This document shows, piece by piece, positions 3,049 to 55,636 of a DNA stretch of 64,000 bases. The translations under genes were made by a program, and so were the position numbers. A model generated the notes under the pieces. It saw nothing but the letters and a program-made list of their open reading frames with translations. It ran no database searches and was not told where the DNA came from. How positions within the stretch are numbered: the stretch's first letter is position 1; every line of letters starts with the position of its first letter. The DNA is taken from positions 62,001 through 126,000 of IMG/VR virus record IMGVR_UViG_3300046665_000548; one strand, 5' to 3'.

Positions 3049-3302
3049 TGGCCACGTGGAACGACAAAGGTTATAAAAATCCCAGCGAGTTTCCGTATTC
3101 CCATTACATTGAGGAAGAGGTCAGCCCGCGACAAATCATCGAGATGTCTAAGTGGTTGAATGCGGATGATGGATTGAAGGGAACTTTCTTCTTCGTCCGG
3201 GTGACGAATGCTCCCGAACATGCTTCGCGGATGAACCCTCCAGTCCAGTTCAATTTTACCGACGAGACGACCGCCATGCACTTTAAGCTCAAATACGGAT
3301 GA
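3045..3302 (+). CDS. FKLRW-family small protein
   Basis: C-terminal FNFTDETTAMHFKLKYG; overlaps the previous stop. Confidence 0.65.
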   Translation: MMATWNDKGYKNPSEFPYSHYIEEEVSPRQIIEMSKWLNADDGLKGTFFFVRVTNAPEHASRMNPPVQFNFTDETTAMHFKLKYG

Positions 3303-3450
3303 AAATGTTATTCGTACTCGTTCAAAGAGATGACTCGGGGGCGATCAGACGCACCTTTGGGCCTTACACGATTGCCGACGTAGAGTTGGCTCAGGCCACT
3401 CTGTTCAAAACCAAAGGAATACAGACGACTATTTGGGAACTAGAGCAGAT

Positions 3451-3693
3451 ATGATGGTGCACGTCATCACCATGCCTGTGAAAAAGTATTACAAAAATTG
3501 GGGGATAATAACGGATTGGTTTTGCATGATGAATGTGAAACTCGCCATGTCGGGCGACGATGGCGGTCTTGGTCCTAATGAATACGATATTGTTCGAGAC
3601 AATGAGAATCAGAACGCCAATGATGATCAGAACGCTAATTTTTTCTTCACCAATCCTCGGCTCGCGTGCCTCTTTAAGATGAGATTCGGATGA
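3451..3693 (+). CDS. FKLRW-family small protein
   Basis: C-terminal FFFTNPRLACLFKMRFG. Confidence 0.6.
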   Translation: MMVHVITMPVKKYYKNWGIITDWFCMMNVKLAMSGDDGGLGPNEYDIVRDNENQNANDDQNANFFFTNPRLACLFKMRFG

Positions 3694-5072
3694 AACTGCA
3701 TAACTCTCTATCAGGCCAAGTCGAACAGTTCATTCCACAGGACCCTAATCAGGTGACGATGTACGTCTGTGGTCCAACGGTTTATGACACCCCTCATGTC
3801 GGCAACGCGCGACCTTTGGTGGTCTTCGATCTCTTGTATCGCCTGCTCGGTGACGAGTTCGCGGCAATCAAGTATGCCCGAAACATTACGGACATTGACG
3901 ACAAGATCATGGATCGCGCCAAAGCGAACGGCGAAGACATTGGCGCGCTGACGCAACGCACGACCGCTGACTATCACGACATTGCGAAAATCTTGGGCTG
4001 CATTCCACCAACGCACGAGCCTCGGGCGACACACAATGTCGATGCCATGCAGGGCATGATTGGCAAGCTGATCCACACGGGCTATGCCTATGAGGCCGAA
4101 GGTCATGTGCTGTTCGACAGCGCCAAGCGCGGCAACGTGTACCCTCTCACGGGTCACGATCCAGACAATTTGCGCGAAGGTCATCGAATTGAGGTAGCTT
4201 CGTATAAGCGTAACGGAGCGGATTTCGTTCTGTGGAAGCCTTCGGAACCCGAGCAGCCAGGATGGGCCAGCCCGTGGGGACGAGGACGGCCGGGCTGGCA
4301 CATCGAATGCTCAGCTATGATCCAAGAGTTGTTGGGCGTCACGATTGACATCCACGGCGGCGGTAATGATTTGCGCTTTCCTCACCACGAAGCAGAGATC
4401 GCTCAATCTGAGTGCACGCATCAAGCTCCGCTCGCTCGCTATTGGGTGCACAACGGGATGTTGCTGCTCAACGGCAAGAAGATGGCCAAGAGTACCGGGA
4501 ATTTCTTTACGGTGCGTCAAATTCTCGATGGCACCGCCTTCGGTCAGAAATTTACCGGGCAGGAGGTCAGGCTTGCCCTTTTGCAGACCCACTATCGGCA
4601 TCCTCTCGATCTGACACTGGCCTCGCTCGACAATGCACGTAAGAGCTTGGACCGTTGGTTTGGTGCTCTCCTGTCGCATCGTGAGTGGTGGCATAGTCGC
4701 GCGTCGTATCCGGAACCAAATATGGTTATGGATTCTCTTCGTGACGACATGAACACGCCGGAAGCGATCATGCATCTTCACGAGATAGCAACGCGCATCA
4801 ACCGCGATCAGAACCACCCTGGGGCAGACGTGCGCGCTATGGTCCGCGCATGCTCCGCTATGGGATTGCTGCCGAACGTTACCCATCCGAAGGCAAATCT
4901 CCTGACGCCGGAAGCCAAAGCGTTGCTCAACAATCGGCTTGCGGCTCGGAAGTACGGCGACTATAGGCAGGCGGACAAAATTCGCGACGAGCTTCGTTCC
5001 AAAGCCTCTATTGAGGTGAAGGACACGAAAGCTGGTCAGCTTTGGTACTATTCTGGAGAATCAATCGCATGA
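3690..5072 (+). CDS. cysS: Cysteine--tRNA ligase
   Basis: MYVCGPTVYD, HVGN (HIGH motif), DFVLWK, GRPGWHIECSAM, DIHGGGNDLRFPHHEAE, KMAKS (KMSKS motif). Confidence 0.97.
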   Translation: MKLHNSLSGQVEQFIPQDPNQVTMYVCGPTVYDTPHVGNARPLVVFDLLYRLLGDEFAAIKYARNITDIDDKIMDRAKANGEDIGALTQRTTADYHDIAKILGCIPPTHEPRATHNVDAMQGMIGKLIHTGYAYEAEGHVLFDSAKRGNVYPLTGHDPDNLREGHRIEVASYKRNGADFVLWKPSEPEQPGWASPWGRGRPGWHIECSAMIQELLGVTIDIHGGGNDLRFPHHEAEIAQSECTHQAPLARYWVHNGMLLLNGKKMAKSTGNFFTVRQILDGTAFGQKFTGQEVRLALLQTHYRHPLDLTLASLDNARKSLDRWFGALLSHREWWHSRASYPEPNMVMDSLRDDMNTPEAIMHLHEIATRINRDQNHPGADVRAMVRACSAMGLLPNVTHPKANLLTPEAKALLNNRLAARKYGDYRQADKIRDELRSKASIEVKDTKAGQLWYYSGESIA

Positions 5073-5102
5073 CGGACCGAGGAGGACTGCGATAAATAAC
5101 GG

Positions 5103-6647
5103 ATGACTTTGCCATCCGTACGCGACCTCCTCACCATCGTTGAGAACTCCCAGCTTGATGAAGCTGGTGCTGGACCGTCTCGAATCGTCAAGCACGTTCA
5201 AGACGGTACTCCATTTTTCATGATTTCTGCTATGCGTGCAGACTTGCCGCATAGCGCGAACATGCGCCGCACTCAACTCCTCAGTGAAGAACTGGCCCAG
5301 CACGGGTTGGTCTTCATTCGGACCACAGGTGAATACCAGGAAGACGGCCAAGAGACTCCATCGCAAGAGTTGTCATTCTTCGTCATGGCTCCTGAGCATG
5401 TAAAGCTCGCCCGTTTCGTCAAGATCGGCACGACGCTCATGACCATCTTCAAACAAGATTCGATCCTTGTCGGCAATGGCGAGAACGTCTTCCTGCAATT
5501 TGCGGACGGCTCTACGCATAGCCTCGGTACGGCAGCTACCTTTGCCCCGGCCGTGCTCGCTCATCTCGGTGGCTTCAGCAAGGTCAAGGGACGCAAGTTC
5601 TCATTCACTGAACCTGATGCGGCCCCCAACGCTGTTCGCTATGGCCAGTCGCGTCCTGAGAAGAAGTTGAAACCAGAAGTCGAGCCCGAACTGACGGAGG
5701 ACGCCCCACAGGGTGCCCCCTTTCGCCTCGACCCGCTCGTAAACCCTGAAAACTACAAGATCACAGACAGCCTTGCTGATGTAAAAAATTGGCGAGCTAA
5801 GTGCTTGTATAGTGCTACGTACAATGACGCGTCAAAGAACAAGAAGACGGGTGATTGGGATACGGTTGGCTACGTGATGATCTCCAAGACTGGAGACACT
5901 ATCATTCCAATTCCTCGCGCTGATGAGCATCACATGGGCTTCGACATGCTACATGATCTCAATGATCAGCTTCGGAAGAACGCTCCGCGCGCACGTCGCG
6001 GAAAGAGTGCACCGGTTGAAGAGGTCAAGTATATCAACATTCGAGACTACTTGCCGATTTGGACTGGAGGTAACAACTACATTTACAACAAGGTAGATGT
6101 TAAGGATTACCTCGTTGTTCTTAGCAAGTACCTCAGTTATGGCGGCCCGGATGGTTTCATGAAGGGCTCAAACGACATGAGAGGCATGGTTATGAGCCTC
6201 AGTGATTTTGTTAAAAACAAGGGTCCGCACGTGATCAAGCCCGGCGAACTTGCTCCTGTTGGAAAGTCAATCTACGCTGCGCTCCAGACCGCCGCGACCG
6301 CATTGAACGCCGCTCGCGGAAATCCGCAGCGCTCCGCGATTGGAAAAGCATTTCAAGCTTCTCTGTCTCTTCTCGACTTCTTCTACAAGACGTGCGGGCA
6401 AACCAATTTGGGATGGGACGAGATCAAAGCTACGATCAAGGCCGTGTCTGCGCTCAAGAAGACGGGCGACGTTCAAAAGCTCGAAGAGATCATGTTCGGA
6501 TTTGGCAGTTTGAAGAACAAGATGCACAACGAGCTTCGTGCAACTCTCGAACGTCAGACGAAGGGCGAGAGAAGCTGGCAAGACGATGATGCCAAAGCTA
6601 CATGGGGCGATGTTGCGATGGCGGTGGACCTGTTGGGGCGCTTCTAA
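5103..6647 (+). CDS. Tagged putative virion protein with an N-terminal T3-type SAM lyase-like domain and an unknown C-terminal domain
   Basis: N-terminal tag VRDLLTIVE; ISAMRADL..ANMRR, TGEYQE..QELSFFV and FKQDSILV resemble T3 SAMase motifs; TAAATA 4 nt upstream. Confidence 0.65.
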   Translation: MTLPSVRDLLTIVENSQLDEAGAGPSRIVKHVQDGTPFFMISAMRADLPHSANMRRTQLLSEELAQHGLVFIRTTGEYQEDGQETPSQELSFFVMAPEHVKLARFVKIGTTLMTIFKQDSILVGNGENVFLQFADGSTHSLGTAATFAPAVLAHLGGFSKVKGRKFSFTEPDAAPNAVRYGQSRPEKKLKPEVEPELTEDAPQGAPFRLDPLVNPENYKITDSLADVKNWRAKCLYSATYNDASKNKKTGDWDTVGYVMISKTGDTIIPIPRADEHHMGFDMLHDLNDQLRKNAPRARRGKSAPVEEVKYINIRDYLPIWTGGNNYIYNKVDVKDYLVVLSKYLSYGGPDGFMKGSNDMRGMVMSLSDFVKNKGPHVIKPGELAPVGKSIYAALQTAATALNAARGNPQRSAIGKAFQASLSLLDFFYKTCGQTNLGWDEIKATIKAVSALKKTGDVQKLEEIMFGFGSLKNKMHNELRATLERQTKGERSWQDDDAKATWGDVAMAVDLLGRF

Positions 6648-6886
6648 TGGCGGCGATGTTCAACGGCGGGATTCGTCGCATGTCGGGAACCTTCGAGATC
6701 AAACTCGATGGTTGCGGCACTGCATCACAATGGCGCAAGATAGAAAATTGGCTTGAGAACGATGACAATACCAATGTCTCGGGCGAATATGGCCACTCTT
6801 TCAGCGGCACTCTGGCCGAACCTCTGTTACGAGTTTGGTTCACTGACGAAAAGACGGCAATCTTTACCAAGCTGTCTTGGGGATAA
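6647..6886 (+). CDS. FKLRW-family small protein
   Basis: C-terminal WFTDEKTAIFTKLSWG; TAATG coupling. Confidence 0.6.
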   Translation: MAAMFNGGIRRMSGTFEIKLDGCGTASQWRKIENWLENDDNTNVSGEYGHSFSGTLAEPLLRVWFTDEKTAIFTKLSWG

Positions 6887-6942
6887 AAGGACTTGACGAA
6901 GCTCTAATTTGTGGTAGATTGAGTCTATCACAGGAGCGATGC

Positions 6943-7326
6943 ATGGCCGACCGAGCTTACATTCTCTCGATCATTTCCGACCTGACCAAGGATGCTACCG
7001 GTTCGCGTATCCGTTTGGATTACCAGTCCATGACGGACTCGGAATTGCAAAGCACCTTCGATTTTTATTCCGATCTGCTCGAAGTCAATGAGCAGCGTGA
7101 AAGCGTTATGCGCCTCCGCGCGCAGAAGGATTGGGAACAGTCCTTGGAACGGCTTATGTCGATGGGCGCGACCTCAATGGCTCAGGCCATCGCGTGGGAC
7201 ATGGAAGCCGAGGGCGTCAACGACAATGACTACGGCTTCTACTGCTATCTCAAGGGTCTCTCGTACGATCTGGAGGCGCGCATTGTCAGCGAAGTCAGCG
7301 CGTCTGAGGAAAGGATCGCGGCATGA
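6943..7326 (+). CDS. Early hypothetical protein
   Basis: CTTGAC-N-TAGATT promoter and AGGAG RBS upstream. Confidence 0.7.
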   Translation: MADRAYILSIISDLTKDATGSRIRLDYQSMTDSELQSTFDFYSDLLEVNEQRESVMRLRAQKDWEQSLERLMSMGATSMAQAIAWDMEAEGVNDNDYGFYCYLKGLSYDLEARIVSEVSASEERIAA

Positions 7327-7622
7327 CCGATCTCACCGTGGCTAACACGATCCTTCAACAGCTTGGTGGCCCTCGCTTCACGGCGATGACCGGCGCAAAG
7401 AACTATGTGGGCGGAGAACGCAGCCTCTCGTTCCGTCTTCCGAAGGCCAATCGCGGCATCAACGGCGTCTACATCACGTCGGAGCCAAGCGACACGTACA
7501 AGATCGAATTCATTCGCGTGCAGAAGACGGAGCGCAAGGTCGTGGAGACCTGCGAGGACGTGTACTGTGATAGTCTCCAGGAAGTGTTCACCCGCGTCAC
7601 TGGCCTCTATACTCGCCTGTAA
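7323..7622 (+). CDS. Conserved phage hypothetical protein
   Basis: ILQQLGGPRFTAMTGAK...DVYCDSLQEVF...TGLYTRL pattern; ATGA coupling. Confidence 0.7.
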   Translation: MTDLTVANTILQQLGGPRFTAMTGAKNYVGGERSLSFRLPKANRGINGVYITSEPSDTYKIEFIRVQKTERKVVETCEDVYCDSLQEVFTRVTGLYTRL

Positions 7623-7832
7623 GGTACTCCCATGAGCACTCTCAGGGGCGGATGGGGGTCTTGTTTCTACTTTGAACAAGAGCGGCACGCGCTTCTGTTT
7701 TACATGACGTTCGCGGGGAAAACCTAACGCTTTTGGTTCCTGAAAAAATCTTCATCGACGTGGGGTTGATCAGACAAGCGAGACATGTAGCTTCATAGTT
7801 GTCGAATCGATTCGACTATCATGGAGCGAAAA

Positions 7833-8003
7833 ATGTCCAATCAGAATCAGGGCAACCAAGGGAACCAGCAGGGCACCCAGCAAGAGGGCGGCAACCAAAG
7901 TTCCAGTGGCGAGCAGAGCGGCGGATCGAACAACCAGAAAGGACAGCATGGCCAGCAAGGGCAGCAGTCCGACAAGGACCATCAGGGCAGCATGAAGGAA
8001 TAG
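7833..8003 (+). CDS. Small Gln/Gly/Asn-rich hydrophilic protein, general-stress-protein-like
   Basis: GGAG RBS; low-complexity Q/G/N composition. Confidence 0.5.
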   Translation: MSNQNQGNQGNQQGTQQEGGNQSSSGEQSGGSNNQKGQHGQQGQQSDKDHQGSMKE

Positions 8004-8137
8004 CGCCTAGCCTTTCTGAGCAACCCAGGTTGTTCAGACGTTCGTGTTTCACAAGAAGGAGGCCAAACCAATCTTTTTCTGTAAAATACTGATCGACATT
8101 GCCGCCTAAACAGCGGATTTATCGCTCACAACGAGCG

Positions 8138-8165
8138 AGGGCGTGGCAAAAGCCACGCCCTTTTC
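8138..8165. terminator. Intrinsic terminator
   Basis: GGGCGTGGC-AAAA-GCCACGCCC followed by TTTT. Confidence 0.7.
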
Positions 8166-8192
8166 GTTTGTGTAATTCTGGAATGAATGGGC

Positions 8193-8828
8193 TTACGACG
8201 TTGGCGGGAGCTTCTTTTTGGTAACGAAATATCGATACGCATCGAAGCTCTGATTCTCGCCCCAGCCATTGTTGGCAGTCAGCCACTCTTGGATAGGCAT
8301 CGAAGGGTCATAGATGCTCGCGATGTTCTTCTCGTTGAGGAAGCCCACGGTGAAGCCCTTCTGCGCCGACTCCGCCATACGGTCGATCCAGAAACGGCGA
8401 CCATCGTAGGTCTGACACTTGTCCGAGATCACGGAATCAAACTTACCGAGCAATTCGTCGTAGAAGACCCGCGTGGTGATCGAAGGCATACCGGCACCCG
8501 CACGCCGCCACAGTACGACCTGAGTAGCGCAGTTTCCGAGCTTGGGTACGACAAGCGGAGTAGCCTCGACGTAATAAACAAGCGCACGGTCGCGCAAGTT
8601 CAGCACGAAGAACTCCAAATTGACGTTCAGAGCATATGCGAACAGAAAGTTCGCGTTTTCCTCGATCACATGATAGTCGGTCTCGGCCAATCGCTGATAT
8701 TCGCTGTGGTTCACAGCCGGATCATTGAGGCCGAAATCTTCTGGCTTCGTGTGCAGGACAGGCATCTCGAACAGCGGCTCCGTCATTGCGCTCTCCACGA
8801 GGTCGATATGATTTCTTAAGGACTTCAT
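8193..8828 (-). CDS. Tagged protein with a GNAT-like fold
   Basis: N-terminal LRNHIDLVES; ISDKCQTYDGRRFW resembles motifs in 49185 and 53923. Confidence 0.6.
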   Translation of the reverse strand: MKSLRNHIDLVESAMTEPLFEMPVLHTKPEDFGLNDPAVNHSEYQRLAETDYHVIEENANFLFAYALNVNLEFFVLNLRDRALVYYVEATPLVVPKLGNCATQVVLWRRAGAGMPSITTRVFYDELLGKFDSVISDKCQTYDGRRFWIDRMAESAQKGFTVGFLNEKNIASIYDPSMPIQEWLTANNGWGENQSFDAYRYFVTKKKLPPTS

Positions 8829-8879
8829 TCCAAGATTCTCAACCTACCACGTTTTGTTCTGCTGTCAAGCGTTGGGCAA

Positions 8880-12848: not shown

Positions 12849-15593
12849 ATGCCGAACTCTGCTGAACAACTACGCGAATGGCTGCGCCTCTTCGAAGATG
12901 ATACCGATTCGTCGTCGGATTCCTCTTCGGACTCCTCAACCTCAGATTCGTCTAGTGATACATCAACCGATTCGACTAAAACCGATACGAAGGCATCAGA
13001 GCCCGCATCGAGTCCGTCTGAGCCAGCATCAGCCCCTTCGGAACCAGCATCGACCTCCGCGAGCGCACCTAGTTCTGCGTCGTCTGGATCGGATTCGAAG
13101 CCTGCTACTCCGTCCGCAACGACGGACGTGGCCTCAGTAAGTCAGCCAGTTGCTTCCACCCCGTCTCCGGTGGCCGTTCCTACGTCAGCTTCAACGTCAG
13201 CTTCAACGTCGGCGGCTATGCCCGCTTCGACGCCTAGTTCGAGCCCGGCGACTGTTTCTACGTCACTGGCATCAGCGCCAACGCCAACTTCGACAACTGC
13301 ACCTACATCCGTTCCAATCAAATTCGACGCTAATAAGATCGGAGGAGAAGGTGGAGCCTCAGCACTTCTAGGTAAGATGGGATATCCGCCAGTCAACATC
13401 CTGGGCAACGGCCCGTCTCAGCTTGGTATTTCAAGTGCCTCGAAGGAACCTAATGCTAACCCCGCCAGCATTATCAATGCTATGGGTGGGCGAGATCGCG
13501 TAACACAAGGACTGTCGAACCTTTCGACAACGGAGCGCGGCCAAGTATCGAGCGCATTTGGCGGAGAGCAACAGCTTCAGGCTGCACTCGATGGCAAAAC
13601 TGAATTCACTCCGCCTGCTGCCGCTGCTGCGGCTAAGGCTGCTCCATCACAAAGCGCTCCTGCGATGCCAGCTTCATCGCCTGTTTCAGCGCCAGCTACC
13701 TCTGCGGCACCGTCTGCTACGCCTTCCGCGTCGAAACCTGCTGCCGCTGCTTCGACGGCCACGCCTTCGACGGCCACGCCTTCGGCTGCTGCGACGCCTT
13801 CGGCTGCTGCGACGCCTTCGGCTGCTGCGACGCCTTCGGCTGCTGCACCATCAACATCTTCATCTACAAATTCTGACGCTACCACCGCGAACGCCAGAAT
13901 GGCCGCATTGCTTGGCCAGAAGAATGTTAGTGACACCACGCCTGATCCGACTAAGGCTTCTGAGCCATCAAAGGCGGCCAGCGTACCCAGCACATCGACA
14001 CCCAGCACAACAAGTGGCGCGGCACCGTCTGCATTGGCAACAAGTCCAGCTAAGACTGCACCAGCCAACGCAACCGAGACCAAATTTGGTGACATCGGCG
14101 CGCTTTCCGGAAAATACGAGTCGGGTGGAAAAAGCGTTCATATGGTCAGCACTGGTAAAGACGATCCAGGAGGTGTTTCATACGGTCGCAATCAGCTTTC
14201 GACCAAAGACAGTATGCCTGCCTATCTACGCGCACCAGAATCCGCTGCGTATCGAGACCAACTAAAAGCGGCAGGTCCAGTCGGTAGCCCTGCCTTCAAT
14301 CAGGCATACAAGGATGTCGCCGCGCGTGATCCAGATGGTTTTCAAAAGTCACAAAATGACTTCTTGATGAGAACGCACTACGATCCAGTGAAGAGTGTTG
14401 CCGATAAGCAAGGTTTCGACACGAACAGTCGAGCCGTGCAACAGGCACTATTCAGCACTAGCGTTCAACATGGACGTGCTGCCGATATTGTGAGAAATGC
14501 CGGAGACATGACCGGCAAGACACCGCAACAGCAGATCAACGCACTTTATGACGCACGAACTGCGTACACACAAGGATTGCCTAATCTTCCAGATAATACA
14601 AAAGCTAGCGTAATAAATCGTTTCGGTAATGAGAGAAACGATGCTCTCGCAATCGCCAGCAGTCCGAACGACAAAAATCCCTTCGACAATAACACGGCAA
14701 CTGCGTCGAACGGAAGCGCCCCTGCGACGAGCGGAAGTAAACCTGCGACCGGGGGCACACAGGTAGCATCAAACTCTCCTGTGGCTCCGAGCAACCACAT
14801 GGACATCGCTCGGTCTATGGTCGGAAAGAACTCGGATCAGGCTCGACAAGATATTACATCTAGAGGCGGTAAGTTCAATAACGGCGTCTGGTGTGCAGAC
14901 TTTGCGAACGATGTTCTCAAGCAGAGTGGACAGCAAGGTAGCGGTAGTTCAATGGCGAAGAGCTTCTTGAACGTCGGTACGAAGGTGGACGCGTCAGAGG
15001 CTAAAAATGGCGACATCGTTGTATTCAATCGCGGCGCTCCGGGCTCCGCGTCGGGTCACGTTGGTTTTGTGGACAGGGTTAATCCAGATGGCAGTGTCAG
15101 AGTTCTGGGCGGAAATCAGGGCGGTCAAGTTAGTATCAAAAACTTTCCCGCAAGCCAAGTTGTCGGTTTCCGAAGAATTGACGGCGCGGGCACGGGAACT
15201 GGCAACGGCGGCACGGCAGTAGCGGCAAACTCTAACACGTCGAACGGAAATGCTTCCAGCAAACCTGCTACGAGCAATGCTGGTAGCTCTGGATCAGCCA
15301 GTAGCGCACCGACCAAAACAGCAAGTAACACAGCGCCGTCAGCGTCCAGCAACACTCGTTCGCAAGATACTCCTGCTTGGACTCCTAGGATTGCATCGTC
15401 ATCCGATGGCCCAGACCTGAAGCGTCCCAAGTCTGCCGATGACACGCCAACTACGGTCCAGGCCAGCACAGACACTCCTGGCGGTGTTGTTACGCCTAGC
15501 TACAGCGCGCCAACACCTAACGCATCACCGAACTTCTTGGCATCGCTTGAGCGTAGCAGGCGACGAGGAGGCAGTTCGAGAATGGCTGCCTAA
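12849..15593 (+). CDS. Large virion-associated peptidoglycan hydrolase with lysozyme-like and NlpC/P60-CHAP domains and S/T/A/P linkers
   Basis: LSGKYESGG..STGKDDPGGVSYG (muramidase-like); WCADFAN..GDIVVF..GHVGFV..LGGNQ (CHAP/NlpC-P60); N-terminal LREWLRLFE; TAAATA upstream. Confidence 0.8.
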   Translation: MPNSAEQLREWLRLFEDDTDSSSDSSSDSSTSDSSSDTSTDSTKTDTKASEPASSPSEPASAPSEPASTSASAPSSASSGSDSKPATPSATTDVASVSQPVASTPSPVAVPTSASTSASTSAAMPASTPSSSPATVSTSLASAPTPTSTTAPTSVPIKFDANKIGGEGGASALLGKMGYPPVNILGNGPSQLGISSASKEPNANPASIINAMGGRDRVTQGLSNLSTTERGQVSSAFGGEQQLQAALDGKTEFTPPAAAAAAKAAPSQSAPAMPASSPVSAPATSAAPSATPSASKPAAAASTATPSTATPSAAATPSAAATPSAAATPSAAAPSTSSSTNSDATTANARMAALLGQKNVSDTTPDPTKASEPSKAASVPSTSTPSTTSGAAPSALATSPAKTAPANATETKFGDIGALSGKYESGGKSVHMVSTGKDDPGGVSYGRNQLSTKDSMPAYLRAPESAAYRDQLKAAGPVGSPAFNQAYKDVAARDPDGFQKSQNDFLMRTHYDPVKSVADKQGFDTNSRAVQQALFSTSVQHGRAADIVRNAGDMTGKTPQQQINALYDARTAYTQGLPNLPDNTKASVINRFGNERNDALAIASSPNDKNPFDNNTATASNGSAPATSGSKPATGGTQVASNSPVAPSNHMDIARSMVGKNSDQARQDITSRGGKFNNGVWCADFANDVLKQSGQQGSGSSMAKSFLNVGTKVDASEAKNGDIVVFNRGAPGSASGHVGFVDRVNPDGSVRVLGGNQGGQVSIKNFPASQVVGFRRIDGAGTGTGNGGTAVAANSNTSNGNASSKPATSNAGSSGSASSAPTKTASNTAPSASSNTRSQDTPAWTPRIASSSDGPDLKRPKSADDTPTTVQASTDTPGGVVTPSYSAPTPNASPNFLASLERSRRRGGSSRMAA
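13760..13845 (+). repeat. In-frame 18-bp tandem repeat encoding (A)TPSAA
   Basis: CGCCTTCGGCTGCTGCGA-type unit repeated about four times within the linker. Confidence 0.8.
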
Positions 15594-46842: not shown

Positions 46843-46850
46843 CATAGTTC

Positions 46851-49184: not shown

Positions 49185-49877
49185 ATGAACATGCGCGACA
49201 TCATCACTCTCATTGAAACTCAAGAGCTAGACGAGATTGAACTCGGTGGCCAGTTGGACAGTTCGTTTGTTGATGATCTCGACAAGAAAGATTTGAGCAG
49301 CGATCAGCTTGATCTTTTCGAACCAACCACGACGGGTCAGCCGCGTCTTCCCGCCAATATGAAGTTGATCGGCCGTACGGGTGCGTATTACGTGGCGCAA
49401 CGCACCGGGCCGCTTCCTGGGCAATCTCAATCCAAAGACGAACATCTATACGTGTTCATCAAAGACAATAAAGCTGCGGGCTATATCTGCCTGTATCCGT
49501 GGAGCGGCGATCACGTCAATTATCCGCATCAAGTGAGCTACCAGCCTGATCTGCACGGCAAGGGTCTTCGCACGGCGGCTGTAATGGTTATGCCGGATTT
49601 TCGCGGACAGAACCTTGGCCCGACTATGTACAAATGGGTTTTGGAGAACGTTTGCGACTACATCATTGCCGATGCCACTCACACCCAGGGCGGCGCTGCA
49701 CTCTGGAAGAGAATGCGGGCGATGAAAAATGTGTTTGCGGTAGAGATTTGGAATGCTGACAAATACGAGACGCAACCACGTTGGCACAGGCATGTGTATG
49801 ATCGTGACCACTACATTCCGTGGATCACATTAAGAGGGCGCGAACATAACATTCGGACCGGGGAGGACGACGAATGA
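49185..49877 (+). CDS. Tagged protein with a GNAT acetyltransferase-like domain
   Basis: MNMRDIITLIE tag; VMPDFRGQNLGPTMY acetyl-CoA motif A. Confidence 0.75.
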   Translation: MNMRDIITLIETQELDEIELGGQLDSSFVDDLDKKDLSSDQLDLFEPTTTGQPRLPANMKLIGRTGAYYVAQRTGPLPGQSQSKDEHLYVFIKDNKAAGYICLYPWSGDHVNYPHQVSYQPDLHGKGLRTAAVMVMPDFRGQNLGPTMYKWVLENVCDYIIADATHTQGGAALWKRMRAMKNVFAVEIWNADKYETQPRWHRHVYDRDHYIPWITLRGREHNIRTGEDDE

Positions 49878-50365
49878 ATATGCGCGATCTTATGACGCTC
49901 GTTGAGGCGCGCGGAGGAACGAAGCTTTATCACGGTTCAAAGAAATCGTTTCCTGTTGGGTTTGTTCTTGAGCCTCAGAAAGATGGCTATGTTCACGCCA
50001 ACAGTGGCGATGAGTTTGATGCGCAAATCAAGATCACGGAGCAGTTGCTCGAAAAATTTCGACCATCAGATCAATTATCCAGATACGAGTCTGTTTTCGT
50101 AACAACAACCCCCGCTACTATTGAGTATGCTGGCGGCAGTACAAACCACGTTTATGTGGTCGAGCCACTTGGACCAATCTTTTTCGGCAATCTCTACTGG
50201 TACAGTCAGATCGAGAATGCAGCATTTGATATCGATGACTATGATCCAGATGAATTGCGTTCTTGGGCGCAAAACTACTGGGCTGCTAAACCATCTGGTC
50301 AATCAGAAACGTATGAGTATCGAACCAATAAGGCGCGGATCGTCAAAGAGGTAAAATGGCGATGA
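49874..50365 (+). CDS. Tagged protein with an ADP-ribosyltransferase (Arr-like) domain
   Basis: MNMRDLMTLVE tag; LYHGS..FPVG..L, VFVT, VYVVEPLG, terminal YEY. Confidence 0.65.
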   Translation: MNMRDLMTLVEARGGTKLYHGSKKSFPVGFVLEPQKDGYVHANSGDEFDAQIKITEQLLEKFRPSDQLSRYESVFVTTTPATIEYAGGSTNHVYVVEPLGPIFFGNLYWYSQIENAAFDIDDYDPDELRSWAQNYWAAKPSGQSETYEYRTNKARIVKEVKWR

Positions 50366-50673
50366 ACATGCGCGACCTGATCTCTATCTGTGAAGCTGAA
50401 GACCTCAAAGCGTTGATGGCCAGCATTCGCGAACGTAACAATGCGGCTGAGGTTATGCTGCGGGATGCACTGTCTAACTCCTCACGACTGGCGCTTGTTC
50501 ACCCCGAGGGCAAGAAGATTTTGGTCAGCAAGTCTCTCGACCCCGACTACAAGTGGCGTCTCACTTACTTTGACGACGCTGGTCCATCGGGCCACGTCGA
50601 ATATCGTGATATCACGCGCGAGATGTCCAACGAAATTGCGATGGCTCTCAAGAACGGGTACGTGCGATCATGA
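50362..50673 (+). CDS. Tagged protein with an unknown domain
   Basis: MNMRDLISICE tag; WRLTYFDDAGPSGH. Confidence 0.7.
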   Translation: MNMRDLISICEAEDLKALMASIRERNNAAEVMLRDALSNSSRLALVHPEGKKILVSKSLDPDYKWRLTYFDDAGPSGHVEYRDITREMSNEIAMALKNGYVRS

Positions 50674-51038
50674 AGATGCGCGATCTTATCGACCTTACCG
50701 AGAGTGCAATTACAGCGACATCCATGGATGGACGCAAAGTTATTATTCTAAAGAACCCTTCTCCGGTTGTTCTGCTTGATAGGTTGAGGCGAACCAGGTC
50801 GTTGCGTGGAATTGTAGTTGGCCAAGATTTGTTTTGGGCCAACAGTTACTCTTTGATTCATGTTCAAATAGGCAAAGCCGTTGGTGCTGCTGATGGTTAC
50901 GGGGATGCCCGGCTCGACCTTAAATACAAAGACGGCGGCGCGAAGCTTTTCATTCTACCGCATAATAAATCGTTCGATGAAATTTCTGCACTGCCTCAGG
51001 TACAGAGATTACAGAACTACATTGCGGAGAAGACTTGA
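50670..51038 (+). CDS. Tagged protein with a KNP-RG-W-H domain
   Basis: MKMRDLIDLTE tag; ILKNPS..LRGIV..LFW....LIH. Confidence 0.7.
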   Translation: MKMRDLIDLTESAITATSMDGRKVIILKNPSPVVLLDRLRRTRSLRGIVVGQDLFWANSYSLIHVQIGKAVGAADGYGDARLDLKYKDGGAKLFILPHNKSFDEISALPQVQRLQNYIAEKT

Positions 51039-51670
51039 TGAATATGCGCGATCTCATGAAGCTTTGTGAGGCTCGGTATAGCCCACCCAAGCCACTCGAT
51101 GGCGGCCCGAAGATCGATGATAACAATCAGTACGGTTCATCGGCTCGTCGCCCAATGTTGCTCAGTCTTCCCGCTAGCCAACCGCAAAGTGCCTACCTTT
51201 TTCACGGTGCTCCTCTCGATCATCTCGTGTCTATTTTGCGAGACAATTGTATCAGCACCGGCATCAATTGGCGCGGTGAAGGCGAGCGCGTAGCATGCAC
51301 CCGCAATTGGAAGATAGCGCTAGGCTTTGGAAACCAAGGCGACTTTGATATGTTTCCGGCATTCCTGGTGCTGGACTGGGCTAAGCTAGCAAAGAAGTAT
51401 CACATCGTGTCTTACGAAGACTGTGACATGCATGGAGAGGCATGGAAAACTAGCGAACAGGAAGAAGCTGTCTGCGGAGAGATCACGCCTCTCAGTTCTT
51501 ATTTGATTTCGATCAATGTTGCGCCGGAAGTTCTTCTGGCTGCAATGCAGGATCGCGAATATGCTGATTGGGTTGTTGGCGAAAAGAGTTTCTTCTCGTC
51601 TCCTAGATATTGGTTCGCGGCTCTTCAGAGATTGTCTCAATCTCCAAAACTGAACGCTTGGAGACCCTGA
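51038..51670 (+). CDS. Tagged protein with an ADP-ribosyltransferase-like domain
   Basis: MNMRDLMKLCE tag; YLFHG, VACTRN..IA..F, LVLD, EQEE. Confidence 0.6.
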   Translation: MNMRDLMKLCEARYSPPKPLDGGPKIDDNNQYGSSARRPMLLSLPASQPQSAYLFHGAPLDHLVSILRDNCISTGINWRGEGERVACTRNWKIALGFGNQGDFDMFPAFLVLDWAKLAKKYHIVSYEDCDMHGEAWKTSEQEEAVCGEITPLSSYLISINVAPEVLLAAMQDREYADWVVGEKSFFSSPRYWFAALQRLSQSPKLNAWRP

Positions 51671-52407
51671 TGGATATGCGCGATCTCATGATCCTATTCG
51701 AGGGCAAAGCAGTAAAGGTTGAGATCGATGATCAACTGCCATTCCGGGTATACATCAATCCAACTCCGCAGCAGATGATGTCTGGTCGTCAGCGCGGTTT
51801 GATCGACACTGAAGGCAACCTGTATGTTTGGGACGCTTATCAGGCGACTCACGACAGTGTTGCGAACGAATTGGGTATCACCTGGGAAAGCGCATTGCTT
51901 CTTGAACCGGACAAGATTGAGATCGTTGGCGGCGACAAAAATCTTGAAAACTGGGTTCATATCAATCGAGCATACGGTGGCAAAATGCCTTTTGTTGAAA
52001 ACTCGCAGCAATATCCGGCCGAGACGTTCATGCATGAAGCCGAAGCCAGCTTGGCCCCCATGTCCGGAAACGTCTCCGCAATCCTAATACCTCAAGACGG
52101 CGATACCGTTGAGATTAATCACATCAGCGCGATGCCGATGCGCTCGGGTTGGGGCACAAAAGCAATGAATATTATCGTTTCGTTGGCAGACCGATGCGGC
52201 GTGACCCTAACGCTTGAGGTCGATAATGACTCGGACGATTGGGGCCATGACGACGAAGACGAGAGCCAACCCACTGACGATACAGCATCAATTCCGTCCA
52301 ACGATGATTTGATGGGTTGGTATGGCGGCTATGGATTTTCTGTTGCTGACGGTCTTTCCTCGCGCATTCAGATGGTAAGAAAGCCGAATACGGCTTTACC
52401 AATTTAA
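51670..52407 (+). CDS. Tagged two-domain protein: KNP-RG-WDA-H domain plus GNAT-like domain
   Basis: MDMRDLMILFE tag; INPT..RGLID..VWDAYQATH; RSGWGTKAM..IV.LADRCGVTLTL..LMGWYGGYGF. Confidence 0.7.
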   Translation: MDMRDLMILFEGKAVKVEIDDQLPFRVYINPTPQQMMSGRQRGLIDTEGNLYVWDAYQATHDSVANELGITWESALLLEPDKIEIVGGDKNLENWVHINRAYGGKMPFVENSQQYPAETFMHEAEASLAPMSGNVSAILIPQDGDTVEINHISAMPMRSGWGTKAMNIIVSLADRCGVTLTLEVDNDSDDWGHDDEDESQPTDDTASIPSNDDLMGWYGGYGFSVADGLSSRIQMVRKPNTALPI

Positions 52408-53461: not shown

Positions 53462-53923
53462 ATGAATATGCGCCATTTCATTTCGCTTTGCGAAAGCCAC
53501 TTGTCAGATGCTTTTGAGGGGATCGACAAGCCAACATTAGTTCTCCCGGCCGGGACCGTTCTTTTTCACGGCACGGATCGCCCGGCCAGTGAGTGGGACC
53601 CGCGTGTTGACCCGATTTGGGGACCGGCATGGTTTGGAGCCGACTTTGAGGTGGCTAACAGTTACGCCAAATTTCAGCGCAGTGGCGAGAATGGCGAGCC
53701 GTACATCATTCAGTATAGCACCAACCGTAGCCTCAAGCTTCTAGAGGCTTCTGCGCCAGAAATTGCGGCGGTGATGGATGAATTGTACGACACCTACATG
53801 ACGGATGAAATCGCGGGTGCCATGCACGATCTTGGCTTCGAAGGCTGGCACATCAAAGATACCGAGGTCATGATCGCGGACGGCAACGCGCTTGATTTCG
53901 TCAAGATATTGAAGGTGCAATAA
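53462..53923 (+). CDS. Tagged protein with an ADP-ribosyltransferase-like domain
   Basis: MNMRHFISLCE tag; LPAGTVLFHGT, AWFG....A..YA, GFEGW...TEVMI. Confidence 0.65.
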   Translation: MNMRHFISLCESHLSDAFEGIDKPTLVLPAGTVLFHGTDRPASEWDPRVDPIWGPAWFGADFEVANSYAKFQRSGENGEPYIIQYSTNRSLKLLEASAPEIAAVMDELYDTYMTDEIAGAMHDLGFEGWHIKDTEVMIADGNALDFVKILKVQ

Positions 53924-54525
53924 TGGATATGCGCTCTCTCATTAGTCTTTGTGAAGACTACTCCGGACCTCCTTTCAAACCACGCAGCAAGTCACCAAAG
54001 TCATTCACGGTTCAGGACAACCTTGTGATTGTCCAGGACAGTGACAAAACCATTTGGGCCTACAACGGAACGCCACGTTCGAACTGGCATCCTGAGGCAA
54101 ATGGCAAAAAGATCGGCGGCGTGCTGCTCCAAGACCATGCTTCCCACGGTGAGGATGCGTGGTCAGTTTATAAGTCGGGCGTCGATAAGCCTTATCAGCG
54201 CAAGGGAGTTGCAAGAGCGCTCTACACGCAAGCCGAACAGAATGCTGCCGCTAAGGGCAAGTCGTTCGTACCATCGGGCTCCGTGTCGGATGATGCATTC
54301 CATTTCTGGAGCAATTTTAGGCCAGAGCGTATTGCAAAGGATGGGCGCAACTGGGCTCAGCATTACGTTGGCAAGCAGGTTCACTTTCAGGATCGCGACT
54401 GGGTAATTACTAGCGCAGCAAGAAGCGACGGAAGATACTTTATGGCGAAACTAGTGAACGGAGACAACACTACGGGTATCCCTCGCCAGATCGTCATCGA
54501 CCAGCTTGGGGATTTCTACAAATGA
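53923..54525 (+). CDS. Tagged protein with a GNAT acetyltransferase-like domain
   Basis: MDMRSLISLCE tag; VDKPYQRKGVARALY. Confidence 0.75.
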   Translation: MDMRSLISLCEDYSGPPFKPRSKSPKSFTVQDNLVIVQDSDKTIWAYNGTPRSNWHPEANGKKIGGVLLQDHASHGEDAWSVYKSGVDKPYQRKGVARALYTQAEQNAAAKGKSFVPSGSVSDDAFHFWSNFRPERIAKDGRNWAQHYVGKQVHFQDRDWVITSAARSDGRYFMAKLVNGDNTTGIPRQIVIDQLGDFYK

Positions 54526-55046
54526 ATATGCGCTACTTGATGAATCTCTGCGAATCTCAAGACCCAGAGATCGAAAAACTTTTAAAGATGGACCCTTTCA
54601 GCAAGGGCAGTGCGTACACTCCGCACTCTCGCGAGAAGCAACTTAAGGCGAAAGAGGCAAGTGCTGCTACGAGAGAATTGAAGGCGATCATCAAGGACGC
54701 AAAACAGTCCGGCGTAGTCATTGAACTTTATCCGTCTGTCCAGACGTACAGCAGCGACATTCCTATGAAATGGATTGAGAACAACTCAGTCAAAGGTACC
54801 GCCGCCAAGTATATGCAGATGATCTGCGATCTCGCAGATCGATACGGACTAGAATTGAACCTGCGCGCGCAGTTGGGAGAGCCGAAACTAGTCGAATACT
54901 ACAAACGCTTCGGCTTCGTTATTTCGCCAGATCAAGAAGCGGCAGTCAAACTTGGTCTATACGGACGAGATGACATCCCAGGAAACAAACTAATCGGAAC
55001 GTCGCCATTTATGTGGCGTCTTCCAAGAACGGAGCAGACCTTATGA
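54522..55046 (+). CDS. Tagged protein with a GNAT-like domain
   Basis: MNMRYLMNLCE tag; KGTAAKYMQMICDLADRYGLELNL..LVEYYKRFGF. Confidence 0.7.
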   Translation: MNMRYLMNLCESQDPEIEKLLKMDPFSKGSAYTPHSREKQLKAKEASAATRELKAIIKDAKQSGVVIELYPSVQTYSSDIPMKWIENNSVKGTAAKYMQMICDLADRYGLELNLRAQLGEPKLVEYYKRFGFVISPDQEAAVKLGLYGRDDIPGNKLIGTSPFMWRLPRTEQTL

Positions 55047-55636
55047 ACATGCGAGACCTGATGAGGCTGTGTGAAGATGCAGCAACGCCATTCCAACCAG
55101 AAGCGCCCGCACCTCAAGACGCCGCGCCAGAACAAACTCCGTTCGAGAAGTGGTTTGCTGGTTCAAAGATTGTCGATGCTTCCGGCAATCCTCTCAAAGT
55201 CTATCATGGAACGTCGAAGGATCAGAATTTTCGGGCGTTCAAGATGAACAAGAACGGTATTTGGTTCACAGCCGATCCCGCCGAAGCGTCTCAATATTCG
55301 GTAGAAAACGACAGCATGGGTCACAAGTACGACAATGGCAAGTTCAATCCCGTGCACACGGCGTCCCGTGTTATTCCCTGCTATGTGCGCGCACTCAAGG
55401 TGATGTACTACGACGTATGGCCGGATCAAATTCGTCTGGCTGATAATTACAAGCGCGCTCAAGGTATCGTGTTCGATCAACTTAGATCGCAGGGTTACGA
55501 TGCCGTAGTTACTGGTGGACTCGTAGTCGCCATTGGAAGCCCGAATCAGATCAAGTCGGCAATCGGAAATCAAAAATTCGATCCATCGAAGAAGAACATC
55601 GATGAGGATGACGACGATCCCAGCACCAAATCCTAA
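55043..55636 (+). CDS. Tagged protein with an ART-PolyVal-like ADP-ribosyltransferase domain
   Basis: MNMRDLMRLCE tag; WFAGSKIVD..GNPLKVYHGT, GIWFT..P..ASQYS, GYDAV, NQIKSAIGN. Confidence 0.75.
   Translation: MNMRDLMRLCEDAATPFQPEAPAPQDAAPEQTPFEKWFAGSKIVDASGNPLKVYHGTSKDQNFRAFKMNKNGIWFTADPAEASQYSVENDSMGHKYDNGKFNPVHTASRVIPCYVRALKVMYYDVWPDQIRLADNYKRAQGIVFDQLRSQGYDAVVTGGLVVAIGSPNQIKSAIGNQKFDPSKKNIDEDDDDPSTKS

What the first reader, a model, noticed from the sequence alone, without database searches (positions are those of the whole stretch)
5103..5620. T3-type SAM lyase domain on a tagged late protein: possibly an injected anti-restriction/anti-BREX enzyme
Seen: residues of about 36-170 read FFMISAMRADL..ANMRR, TGEYQE..PSQELSFFV, FKQDSILV and GGFSKVKGRKF. 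As I recall the T3 SAMase sequence, these match VLVSAFRSNL..NMSR, TGCYRE..PTEEKTVRV, WEQDCVLV and GCFT...GRRW, including the active-site Glu and Gln positions. Known: T3 SAMase is an early standalone protein that counters type I R-M and BREX. Here the domain follows a late promoter and tag and is joined to a second unknown domain of about 310 aa via a possible cleavage site (ELTE/DA). Inference: a packaged polyprotein delivering SAM lyase together with the DNA.
Basis: partly seen in the sequence, partly recalled or inferred. Interest (0 to 1): 0.8.

Follow-up and report, generated by a model that had tools for sequence, protein, structure and literature searches.

The report
Virion-tagged SAM lyase of a huge phage
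A late gene of a roughly 600-kb phage encodes a T3-type enzyme that destroys S-adenosylmethionine; it carries the short N-terminal leader seen on a dozen nearby genes, and similarly tagged proteins of a cultured relative were detected in virions, so the phage probably injects this anti-restriction enzyme ready-made with its DNA.

Summary
ORF 5103-6647 (+, 514 aa) carries a true S-adenosylmethionine (SAM) lyase domain at residues ~20-181. It matches Pfam PF23780 (55.8 bits, cut-off 28). A profile hits T3 SAMase in the PDB, and hhalign gives 95.5%. The AlphaFold model (pLDDT 89) has T3 SAM lyase as its top Foldseek hit. The family's ligand-binding residues are all present (G76, Y78, E89, Q118, D119).

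The delivery idea is supported only circumstantially.
- A T4-late-like TAAATA motif lies 4-6 nt before the ATG. It occurs 10 times against 0.7 expected, including before three structural genes.
- An N-terminal leader (R-x-h-h-x-h-x-E) opens 11 further ORFs here in canonical form; two more carry variants. It ends in the h-x-E pattern cut by T4-type prohead proteases.
- In the cultured relative Atu_ph07, similarly tagged proteins were detected in virions by mass spectrometry. They include the homologue of one tagged window ORF.
- Both modules also exist as standalone tagged proteins and inside polyvalent proteins with ART-PolyVal or Tad3 domains.
- The linker site ELTE/DA aligns with the leader ends of standalone C-domain proteins.

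The 308-aa C-terminal domain folds confidently (pLDDT 93) but matches nothing in Pfam, PDB or BFVD. Activity, packaging and cleavage remain untested.

The parts
5092..5098 (+). ATAAATA, a T4-late-type promoter-like motif 4 nt upstream of the ATG, with no conserved -35 region
   Evidence: ATAAATA-N4-6-ATG occurs 6 times against 0.17 expected. TAAATA-N4-6-ATG occurs 10 times against 0.72 expected. The same arrangement precedes the head-tail adaptor (30492-), a virion protein (32901+) and the gp15-like sheath stabiliser (42302+). It is conserved before the orthologue in L007. Upstream positions are not conserved.
5103..6647 (+). 514-aa ORF: leader + SAM lyase + linker + unknown C-domain
   Evidence: Full-length orthologues P0002-P0004 are 75-77% identical.
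5103..5144 (+). N-terminal leader (tag), residues 1-14, MTLPSVRDLLTIVE, ending in I-V-E
   Evidence: The core R-x-h-h-x-h-x-E has 16 hits in the window, 12 directly after a start Met, against 0 in a reversed-sequence control. Conservation is at the amino-acid level with synonymous codon variation. The model shows a low-confidence helix at 6-16 followed by a disordered stretch at 14-19.
5157..5645 (+). SAM lyase domain (PF23780), residues ~19-181
5328..5336 (+). G76-E77-Y78, equivalent to Svi3-3 G56/Y58 and T3 G55/Y57 (ribose packing; cation-pi contact with the sulfonium)
   Evidence: Alignments. Residue roles are from PMC7877911. G76 is invariant in 30 sequences.
5367..5369 (+). E89, equivalent to Svi3-3 E69 and T3 E68, the key catalytic/ligand-orienting glutamate
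   Evidence: Conserved in at least 90% of the alignment.
5454..5459 (+). Q118-D119, equivalent to Svi3-3 Q104-E105 and T3 Q94-D95
   Evidence: Q118 is invariant.
5646..5720 (+). Charged linker, residues 182-206. It contains E-L-T-E (5688-5699), a candidate prohead-protease site with cleavage after E199.
   Evidence: The site aligns with the leader ends of standalone C-domain proteins. L-T-E or L-K-E is kept in all four orthologues. In relative L006 the leader is joined directly to this linker.
5721..6644 (+). C-terminal domain of unknown function, residues 207-514: an alpha/beta subdomain plus a helical bundle
   Evidence: Of the 150 listed hits (379 below E 0.001), most are this domain, largely standalone ~300-aa proteins. 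The model has pLDDT 93.2 and pTM 0.88. There is no match in Pfam, PHROGs, NCBIfam, PADLOC, PDB sequences, PDB folds or BFVD folds.
5916..5939 (+). R272-A-D274-E275-H276-H-M-G279, the conserved polar motif of the C-domain
   Evidence: D, H and G are invariant, and R and E are at least 90% conserved, in 72 sequences.
6513..6527 (+). K471-N-K-M-H475, the second conserved polar motif (H invariant)
49185..52407 (+). Tandem array of six genes that all open with M(N/D/K)MRD(L/I)..(L/I).E. The first is preceded by TAAATA.
53462..55636 (+). Second tandem array of four tagged genes. The first is preceded by ATAAATA.
12849..15593 (+). 914-aa protein with a tag variant 8 residues in from the start Met (..LREWLRLFED), a VgrG3-C lysozyme-like domain and a CHAP domain
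8193..8828 (-). 211-aa protein with a tag variant (MKSLRNHIDLVES) that the strict core motif does not capture. Its Atu_ph07 homologue gp672 (MRLIDLLE..) is in the virion proteome.
   Evidence: PMC6102473 Table S5.

Best explanation
The gene encodes a modular, virion-delivered anti-defence protein of a huge T4-superfamily myovirus. The contig is 607,744 bp and the closest cultured relatives are Sinorhizobium phage Phosso and Agrobacterium phage Atu_ph07.

Proposed mechanism, with each step marked as shown or inferred:
1. The gene is transcribed late from a gp55-type TAAATA promoter placed so close to the ATG that the mRNA is probably leaderless (inferred).
2. The 14-residue N-terminal leader works like the T4 capsid-targeting sequence and brings the protein into the prohead core (inferred).
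3. The gp21-type prohead protease cuts after h-x-E. This removes the leader (after E14) and probably separates the two modules at ELTE199/D200 (inferred).
4. The mature pieces are ejected with the DNA (inferred).
5. The SAM lyase module refolds into the PII-like trimer and converts SAM to methylthioadenosine plus homoserine lactone (inferred).
6. SAM-dependent defences (type I/III restriction, BREX) and host DNA methylation lose their cofactor before any phage gene is expressed (inferred).
7. The C-terminal module is a second, independent effector. It is probably an enzyme that uses the invariant D-E-H-H...K-N-x-x-H cluster (inferred).

Shown here: domain identity, fold, active-site residues, enrichment of the promoter-like motif, the leader family, modularity, and virion detection of similarly tagged proteins in a cultured relative.
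For: SAM lyase identity:
- Pfam 55.8 bits.
- PDB profile hit to T3 SAMase, E 5e-7.
- hhalign probability 95.5%.
- Foldseek top hits 8BB1/7OCK, probability 1.00.
- G76/Y78/E89/Q118/D119 match the residues shown to bind SAM in Svi3-3 and T3.
- The N-terminal 200 aa, which hold the lyase module, are 80-87% identical among orthologues, against 72-73% for the C-domain.

Late expression:
- TAAATA-N4-6-ATG occurs 10 times against 0.72 expected.
- It lies before the adaptor, a virion protein and the sheath stabiliser.
- There is no -35 conservation.
- It is conserved in L007 and in an unrelated-GC phage, L004.
- Atu_ph07 has a gp55-like sigma factor.

Leader:
- 12 of 16 core-motif hits sit at ORF starts.
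- Conservation is at the protein level.
- The leader is about 11 residues long with h-x-E at its end, like the 10-residue T4 CTS, whose processing determinants are at residues 8 and 10, and like the gp21 motif L/I-x-E (PMC9026906).

Virion link:
- Atu_ph07 gp53-gp63 (MRWEQLTE-type leaders) and gp43, gp47 and gp672 were all detected by ESI-MS/MS in virions.
- gp53 carries a Zeta-toxin kinase domain.
- gp672 is the homologue of window ORF 8193-8828.
- Atu_ph07 has a gp21 homologue, gp204.

Modularity and polyvalent context:
- Standalone SAM lyases of 178-231 aa, most opening with the same leader, and standalone C-domains, 50 of 67 with an N-terminal h-x-E leader.
- Fusions: ART-PolyVal + C-domain (P0008, P0139, P0140), Tad3 + SAM lyase (P0136), and SAM lyase + C-domain in larger proteins (P0146, P0097).
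- L006 has the leader joined straight to the linker and C-domain, with no lyase module.
Against: - There is no direct evidence of packaging, cleavage, ejection or catalysis.
- The leader of this protein is a variant, with five residues before the Arg instead of three.
- The Atu_ph07 leaders are shorter and not identical.
- The Atu_ph07 proteome came from PEG-purified phage and also lists likely contaminants (ribonucleotide reductase, RecA-like protein, terminase). Detection is therefore not proof of encapsidation.
- The promoter motif sits where a Shine-Dalgarno sequence would be. It requires leaderless translation or could be a translation signal instead.
- No gp21-like protease or gp55-like sigma factor lies in this window.
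- h-x-E is a short motif. A chance occurrence in a 25-residue linker has a probability of about 0.2 (my estimate).
- SAM lyases act as trimers with inter-subunit active sites, so a few ejected, unfolded copies must refold and assemble.
- The module is absent from one syntenic relative, so it is dispensable.
Confidence: 0.55

Rival explanations
1. The protein is a late cytoplasmic SAM lyase that is never packaged. It acts late in infection, for example to keep progeny DNA unmethylated or to shut down host SAM metabolism. The shared leader serves another purpose, such as assembly into a cytoplasmic complex, regulation, or homology for cassette exchange.
For: - Catalytic residues and fold are as in the best explanation.
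- T3 SAMase is known to keep phage DNA unmethylated (PMC8406200 abstract).
- Nothing here proves packaging.
- The Atu_ph07 proteome contains non-structural proteins.
Against: - The leader is shared with a 914-aa lysozyme-like + CHAP protein.
- The leader is also shared with proteins whose Atu_ph07 counterparts are abundant in virions: 13 tandem genes (gp53-gp65), 11 of them leader-bearing paralogues, with 3-31 peptides each.
- The leader ends in the prohead-protease motif.
- Both modules occur in polyvalent proteins, which are predicted to be injected.
Confidence: 0.2
2. The domain is a lyase for a SAM-derived molecule rather than SAM itself. The example is the type III CRISPR second messenger SAM-AMP, which would make it an anti-CRISPR. 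The delivery mode could be the same.
For: The same PII-like family contains SAM-AMP-specific lyases. [quoted passage not shown]
Against: - The sequence and fold are closest to T3 SAMase, a SAM lyase.
- All SAM-binding residues defined in Svi3-3 are kept.
- There is no information on CorA-type CRISPR systems in the (unknown) host.
Confidence: 0.12
3. The protein is a structural or internal virion protein in which the PII-like domain is a non-catalytic ligand-binding or oligomerisation module.
For: PII-like folds bind many ligands (PMC12255297). The protein is late and tagged.
Against: The G-x-Y...E...Q-D constellation needed for SAM binding and turnover is kept and is invariant or nearly invariant across 30 homologues. 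One relative lacks the module without losing the rest of the protein.
Confidence: 0.06

Closest known systems
T3 SAMase (gp0.3; PDB 7OCK, 8BB1) and the environmental SAM lyase Svi3-3 (6ZM9)
   Same: Same Pfam family, same predicted ferredoxin-like PII fold, and the same G-x-Y / E / Q-(D/E) substrate-binding residues. The expected chemistry is SAM to MTA plus homoserine lactone, and the expected role is starving SAM-dependent restriction and BREX.
   Different: T3 SAMase is a 152-aa standalone protein and the first protein expressed on infection. Here the domain follows a late-type promoter and an N-terminal leader, and is fused through a linker to a 308-aa second domain. Identity to T3 is only 25% over 91 aa. 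MetK binding, the second activity of T3 SAMase, cannot be inferred.
T4 internal proteins and Alt, with their capsid targeting sequence (CTS)
   Same: A short N-terminal leader is shared by otherwise unrelated proteins and ends in the L/I-x-E site of the gp21 prohead protease. The cargo includes host-modifying or anti-restriction proteins (IPI*, the ADP-ribosyltransferase Alt). The genes lie in variable tandem loci.
   Different: The leader sequence is different (M-N-M-R-D-L-h-x-L-x-E). There are far more tagged genes (at least 14 in 64 kb). The cargo includes a SAM lyase. The function is not shown experimentally.
Polyvalent proteins (Iyer et al. 2017, PMC5512222)
   Same: Unrelated effector domains are fused in one late-gene product predicted to be injected with the DNA. 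The same two domains occur in large proteins with ART-PolyVal, Tad3 and ParB-like domains.
   Different: This protein has only two domains. It has no MuF, MPTase or other hallmark domain. Processing would be by the prohead protease rather than an in-built peptidase. No text match for SAMase or S-adenosylmethionine was found in that paper.
Candidate AcrIIIB4, a phage SAM-AMP lyase (PMC12255297)
   Same: A phage lyase of the same superfamily fused to a domain of unknown function.
   Different: There the extra domain is N-terminal and the substrate is SAM-AMP. No virion association has been proposed.
P1 Dar system (DarA, DarB, Hdf)
   Same: Capsid-packaged, ejected antirestriction proteins encoded among late genes.
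   Different: There is no sequence or domain relationship, and the mechanism is different (protection of DNA in cis).

Membership tests
SAM lyase family (Pfam PF23780; T3 SAMase / Svi3-3) | Profile match above the curated threshold | tested here: met
   55.8 bits against a cut-off of 28, E 6e-15. PDB profile hit to T3 SAMase, E 5e-7. hhalign probability 95.5%.
SAM lyase family (Pfam PF23780; T3 SAMase / Svi3-3) | Conserved substrate-binding residues: Gly, Tyr, Glu and Gln-(Glu/Asp), i.e. Svi3-3 G56, Y58, E69, Q104, E105 | tested here: met
   G76, Y78, E89, Q118 and D119 align to them, with identical G-to-E spacing of 13 residues.
SAM lyase family (Pfam PF23780; T3 SAMase / Svi3-3) | Ferredoxin-like PII-type fold | tested here: met
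   Model pLDDT 89. Foldseek top hits are T3 SAM lyase (TM 0.74 on the target) and Svi3-3, followed at weak scores by PII-like and CutA proteins.
SAM lyase family (Pfam PF23780; T3 SAMase / Svi3-3) | Homotrimer with active sites at subunit interfaces | not testable with these tools
   Only monomer prediction was available.
SAM lyase family (Pfam PF23780; T3 SAMase / Svi3-3) | Cleaves SAM to MTA plus homoserine lactone | not testable with these tools
   This needs an enzyme assay.
T4-type capsid-targeted internal proteins | A short N-terminal leader shared by unrelated proteins | tested here: met
   12 ORFs carry the strict core directly after their start Met, and 3 more carry variants. The reversed-sequence control gives 0. 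The same leader is on standalone homologues from other contigs.
T4-type capsid-targeted internal proteins | The leader ends in the prohead-protease site (hydrophobic-x-Glu) | tested here: met
   All leaders end in L/I-x-E followed by a small or polar residue. The T4 motif is from PMC9026906.
T4-type capsid-targeted internal proteins | A gp21-type prohead protease is encoded by the phage | tested here: inconclusive
   None was identified among the roughly 45 window ORFs scanned. The relative Atu_ph07 has a gp21 homologue, gp204. The rest of the 608-kb contig was not available.
T4-type capsid-targeted internal proteins | The protein is present in the virion, N-terminally processed, and ejected | not testable with these tools
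   Indirect only: tagged Atu_ph07 proteins gp43, gp47, gp53-63 and gp672 are in the virion proteome.
Polyvalent proteins (Iyer et al. 2017) | Two or more domains of disparate activity in one polypeptide of a phage late region | tested here: met
   SAM lyase plus an unrelated 308-aa domain. The gene lies 2.7 kb from the large terminase gene, in a window that also holds sheath, tube and adaptor genes.
Polyvalent proteins (Iyer et al. 2017) | The same domains recur in other polyvalent architectures with hallmark domains | tested here: met
   P0140 (2772 aa): 4x ART-PolyVal + C-domain. P0139 and P0008: ART-PolyVal + C-domain. P0136: Tad3 + SAM lyase.
Polyvalent proteins (Iyer et al. 2017) | Injected with the DNA at the start of infection | not testable with these tools
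   This is a prediction in the original paper as well.

The most novel reading that the evidence does not exclude
Huge T4-superfamily phages of the Atu_ph07/Phosso lineage may use a portable 9-14-residue capsid-targeting leader to load a large, fast-evolving arsenal of enzymes into the capsid. At least 14 tagged genes lie in this 64-kb window alone. The arsenal would include a SAM lyase, ART-like proteins, cell-wall hydrolases, kinases, and a widespread 300-aa domain with a fold not seen in the PDB or BFVD. Cofactor depletion and other counter-defences would then be delivered ready-made with the DNA. The leader would also be a ready tool for packaging foreign proteins into these phages.
Probability: 0.45. 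Interest if true: 0.8.

Novelty: new variant of a known kind. Interest (0 to 1): 0.62.

Why it matters
SAM lyases are known only as early, newly synthesised anti-restriction/anti-BREX enzymes. A pre-made, injected version would remove the window in which incoming DNA is exposed. That window is a real problem for a 600-kb genome that enters and expresses slowly.

The finding also exposes a simple sequence rule for listing the injected proteins of a whole lineage of huge phages from sequence alone: a TAAATA motif close to the ATG plus an M-x-M-R-D-L-h-x-L-x-E leader. Cultured relatives (Atu_ph07, Phosso) are available to test it.

Finally, it points to a widespread, confidently folding 300-aa domain of unknown function that travels with ADP-ribosyltransferases, SAM lyases and a Thoeris inhibitor. 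That makes it a good candidate for a new counter-defence activity.

Tried and rejected
Searches that found nothing:
- Single-sequence phmmer against the PDB; only the profile reached T3 SAMase.
- Megablast of 3000-9000 and tblastn of the protein against 50,697 phage records. No cultured phage has a close homologue of either module.
- For the C-domain: PADLOC and NCBIfam, a PDB profile search that returned only helical-bundle noise, and Foldseek against the PDB (best hit a HEPN protein, E 0.49, probability 0.25) and BFVD (best E 0.17). I do not read the K-N-x-x-H motif as HEPN, because the spacing is one residue short of Rx4-6H.
- PHROGs for the ten tandem tagged genes was almost empty.

Ideas rejected or not confirmed:
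- That the shared leader is an RNA-level signal for leaderless translation. The codons vary synonymously, and most tagged genes sit inside operons without the promoter motif.
- That large polyvalent homologues carry the same leader at or between their domains. It is not seen in the large ones. Internal leader copies occur only in the 345-365-aa proteins P0012 and P0013, which lack it at their own N-termini.
- Whether the leader on ORF 10939-10157 is the same signal. Its Phosso homologue has a different N-terminus.

Other:
- The window holds no second copy of either module.
Full report
**What is there**

ORF 5103-6647 (+) is one uninterrupted 514-aa frame. It lies directly downstream of a complete phage cysteinyl-tRNA synthetase gene at 3690-5072. 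The window belongs to a huge myovirus:
- The protein's only exact database copy sits on a 607,744-bp contig.
- The window encodes a T4-type large terminase, tail sheath, tail tube, gp15-like sheath stabiliser, head closure and head-tail adaptor proteins.
- It also encodes six tRNAs.
- The terminase is 61% identical to that of Sinorhizobium phage Phosso and 53% identical to that of Agrobacterium phage Atu_ph07.
- No nucleotide or tblastn match to the gene itself exists among 50,697 phage records.

**The SAM lyase domain is real**

The T3 strings recalled from memory are correct when checked against T3 gene 0.3. The supporting results are:
- Pfam PF23780 scores 55.8 bits against a cut-off of 28.
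- A profile of 30 homologues hits the solved T3 SAMase (7OCK) at E 5e-7 and Svi3-3 (6ZM9) at E 0.013.
- hhalign against T3 gp0.3 gives 95.5% probability.
- An AlphaFold2 model of residues 1-200 has pLDDT 89 and pTM 0.80. Its five best PDB matches are T3 SAM lyase chains (8BB1_E: E 1e-6, TM 0.74, rmsd 2.8 A), followed by Svi3-3.

Guo et al. (PMC7877911) found that few residues are conserved across the active SAM lyases they aligned. They name Gly56, Tyr58, Glu69 and Gln104, with Glu105 as the hydrogen-bond partner of Tyr58. Glu69, and its T3 equivalent Glu68, is critical. Here these residues are G76, Y78, E89, Q118 and D119, with the same spacing. G76 and Q118 are invariant and E89 is nearly invariant among the 30 homologues. 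The N-terminal 200 aa, which hold the lyase module, are 80-87% identical among the four orthologues, more than the C-domain at 72-73%. I therefore regard the domain as a probably active SAM lyase. The substrate itself is untested, and a related phage enzyme is specific for SAM-AMP (PMC12255297).

**The promoter-like motif**

ATAAATA lies 4 nt before the ATG.
- TAAATA followed by 4-6 nt and ATG occurs 10 times in the window against 0.72 expected from shuffles.
- These sites precede the head-tail adaptor (30492-), a virion structural protein (32901+), the gp15-like protein (42302+), the first gene of each tagged array (49185, 53462) and this gene.
- The motif also occurs farther upstream of the sheath gene.
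- Nothing is conserved in the -35 region. Absence of a -35 element is typical of T4 late promoters (TATAAATA); this point is from my own knowledge.
- Atu_ph07 encodes a gp55-like late sigma factor.
- The motif is kept before the orthologue in L007 and before tagged genes in a different phage with 46% GC, L004.

The spacing leaves no room for a Shine-Dalgarno sequence. These mRNAs would therefore be leaderless, or else the motif has another role. This is an inference.

**The tag**

- An eight-residue core (R-x-h-h-x-h-x-E) occurs 16 times in long reading frames of the window. Twelve of these sit directly after a start Met, and a reversed-sequence control gives none.
- Ten of the twelve form two tandem arrays (49185-52407 and 53462-55636) that open with M-N-M-R-D-L-h-x-L-x-E.
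- Codon usage within the tag varies synonymously, so selection acts on the peptide.
- The tag is about 11 residues long (14 in this protein) and always ends in hydrophobic-x-Glu.
- By comparison, the T4 capsid targeting sequence is 10 residues with processing determinants at positions 8 and 10, and gp21 cuts after L/I-x-E (PMC9026906).
- Another protein with a variant of the tag, 8 residues in from its start Met, carries VgrG3-type lysozyme-like and CHAP domains.

**Link to virions**

In Atu_ph07 the tandem paralogues gp53-gp63 open with MRWEQLTE-type leaders, and gp43 and gp672 open with MRLIDLLE. All of these were detected in virions by ESI-MS/MS with 2-31 unique peptides each (PMC6102473 Table S5). 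Three further points tie this to the window:
- gp672 is the tblastn homologue of the tagged window ORF 8193-8828.
- gp53 contains a Zeta-toxin kinase domain.
- Atu_ph07 has a T4 gp21 homologue, gp204.

The caveat is that the preparation was PEG-purified and the list also contains likely contaminants.

**Modularity**

A search of 1.84 billion representative proteins found 379 relatives.
- Many of the listed hits are standalone ~300-aa C-domain proteins.
- About 19 listed cluster representatives are standalone SAM lyases of 178-231 aa, most of which open with the same leader.
- Of 67 standalone C-domain proteins, 50 begin with a Met...h-x-E leader. In those where it was located, the conserved F-x-L-x-P strand follows a few residues (typically 3-8) after the Glu.
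- In the window protein the linker reads ..PELTE/DAPQGAP-FRLDP. The LTE aligns with those leader ends and is kept as LTE or LKE in all orthologues.
- P0012 and P0013 carry an internal leader between an unknown N-domain and the lyase.
- In the syntenic relative L006 the leader is joined directly to the linker and C-domain. The lyase module is cleanly missing, and the region also has a frameshift in a poor assembly.
- Larger fusions are P0140 (four ART-PolyVal + C-domain, 2772 aa), P0139 and P0008 (ART-PolyVal + C-domain), P0136 (Tad3 anti-Thoeris + SAM lyase), and P0146 and P0097 (SAM lyase + C-domain).

This is the architecture class described as polyvalent proteins, which are predicted to be injected with the DNA (PMC5512222). 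That paper gave no text match for SAMase or S-adenosylmethionine. My literature searches found no report of a virion-delivered SAM lyase or of this leader.

**The C-domain**

The model has pLDDT 93.2 and pTM 0.88. It shows an alpha/beta subdomain followed by a helical bundle. Invariant residues include W230, Y257, P269, D274, H276, G279 and H475, and R272, E275 and K471 are nearly invariant. No family, solved structure or predicted viral structure matches it. I read it as a second effector, probably an enzyme. I do not read it as a packaging adaptor, because most tagged SAM lyases lack it.

**Verdict**

- Confidence that this is a member of the SAM lyase family: about 0.95.
- Confidence that it is catalytically active on SAM: about 0.75.
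- Confidence that it is packaged and ejected: about 0.55-0.6.
- Confidence that it is cleaved at ELTE: about 0.4.

Noticed in passing
window 2770-3048, 3045-3302, 3433-3693, 6602-6886 (+); L007 7557-7790: Four small paralogous ORFs (85-94 aa) share a conserved C-terminal end (..F-F/T..A..FK-h-x-F/W-G). They flank the CysRS gene and the SAM lyase gene. The copy downstream of the SAM lyase gene is conserved in a related contig.
   Followed up: no
window 3690-5072 (+): A complete phage-encoded class I cysteinyl-tRNA synthetase (catalytic, DALR and anticodon-binding domains). It is fragmented into three ORFs in relative L006.
   Followed up: partly
window 5092, 15863, 20326, 30503(-), 32890, 42291, 47745(-), 49174, 53449, 58872(-): TAAATA lies 4-6 nt before the ATG and leaves no room for a Shine-Dalgarno sequence. 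These late mRNAs may be leaderless. In Phosso and at the sheath gene the same motif lies farther upstream, with a normal ribosome-binding site.
   Followed up: partly
window 46416-47194 (+): A cluster of six tRNA genes (Gly-GCC, two Met-CAT, Ala-GGC, Ala-TGC, Gly-TCC) lies immediately downstream of an ATAAATA motif.
   Followed up: no
window 31197-32885 (+): An HWE-type sensor histidine kinase with a dCache domain is encoded between virion genes. Atu_ph07 annotates a sensor histidine kinase (gp049) in its virion-protein cluster. HWE kinases suggest an alphaproteobacterial host.
   Followed up: no
window 12849-15593 (+): A 914-aa protein carries a variant of the tag 8 residues in from its start Met, a long Ser/Asp-rich low-complexity stretch, a VgrG3-C lysozyme-like domain and a CHAP domain. 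It is a likely ejected cell-wall hydrolase.
   Followed up: partly
window 43574-45772 (-): A 732-aa protein made of many weak helix-turn-helix matches (MarR, HTH_3, Cro-like, sigma-70 region 4-like).
   Followed up: no
window 37781-38821 (-): An RNA ligase (PF09414) with an N-terminal part matching HNH endonuclease families.
   Followed up: no
L006 5663-6942: In a syntenic relative, the leader MTLPSVRDLISIVES is joined directly to the linker and C-domain. This is a natural deletion, or non-insertion, of the whole SAM lyase module. There is also a frameshift at the junction.
   Followed up: yes
L008 (Atu_ph07 15000-64999), genes gp042, gp053-gp063: Atu_ph07 has a tandem array of about 11 paralogues opening with MRWEQLTE-like leaders. 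gp053 has a Zeta-toxin kinase domain and gp042 an InPase pyrophosphatase domain. All are in the published virion proteome, but the shared leader does not seem to have been noted.
   Followed up: partly
L003 2196-2615; window residues 48-105 of the ORF: DUF3293 (PF11697) gives weak overlapping matches to the SAM lyase region, and scores above its threshold in P0146 and P0097. It also occurs as a separate gene next to a tagged SAM lyase. DUF3293 may be a related, uncharacterised branch of the SAM lyase superfamily.
   Followed up: no
window 8880-10160 (-): A 426-aa NUDIX protein with long N- and C-terminal extensions lies next to tagged genes. NUDIX proteins (gp238, gp303) are also listed in the Atu_ph07 virion proteome.
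   Followed up: no
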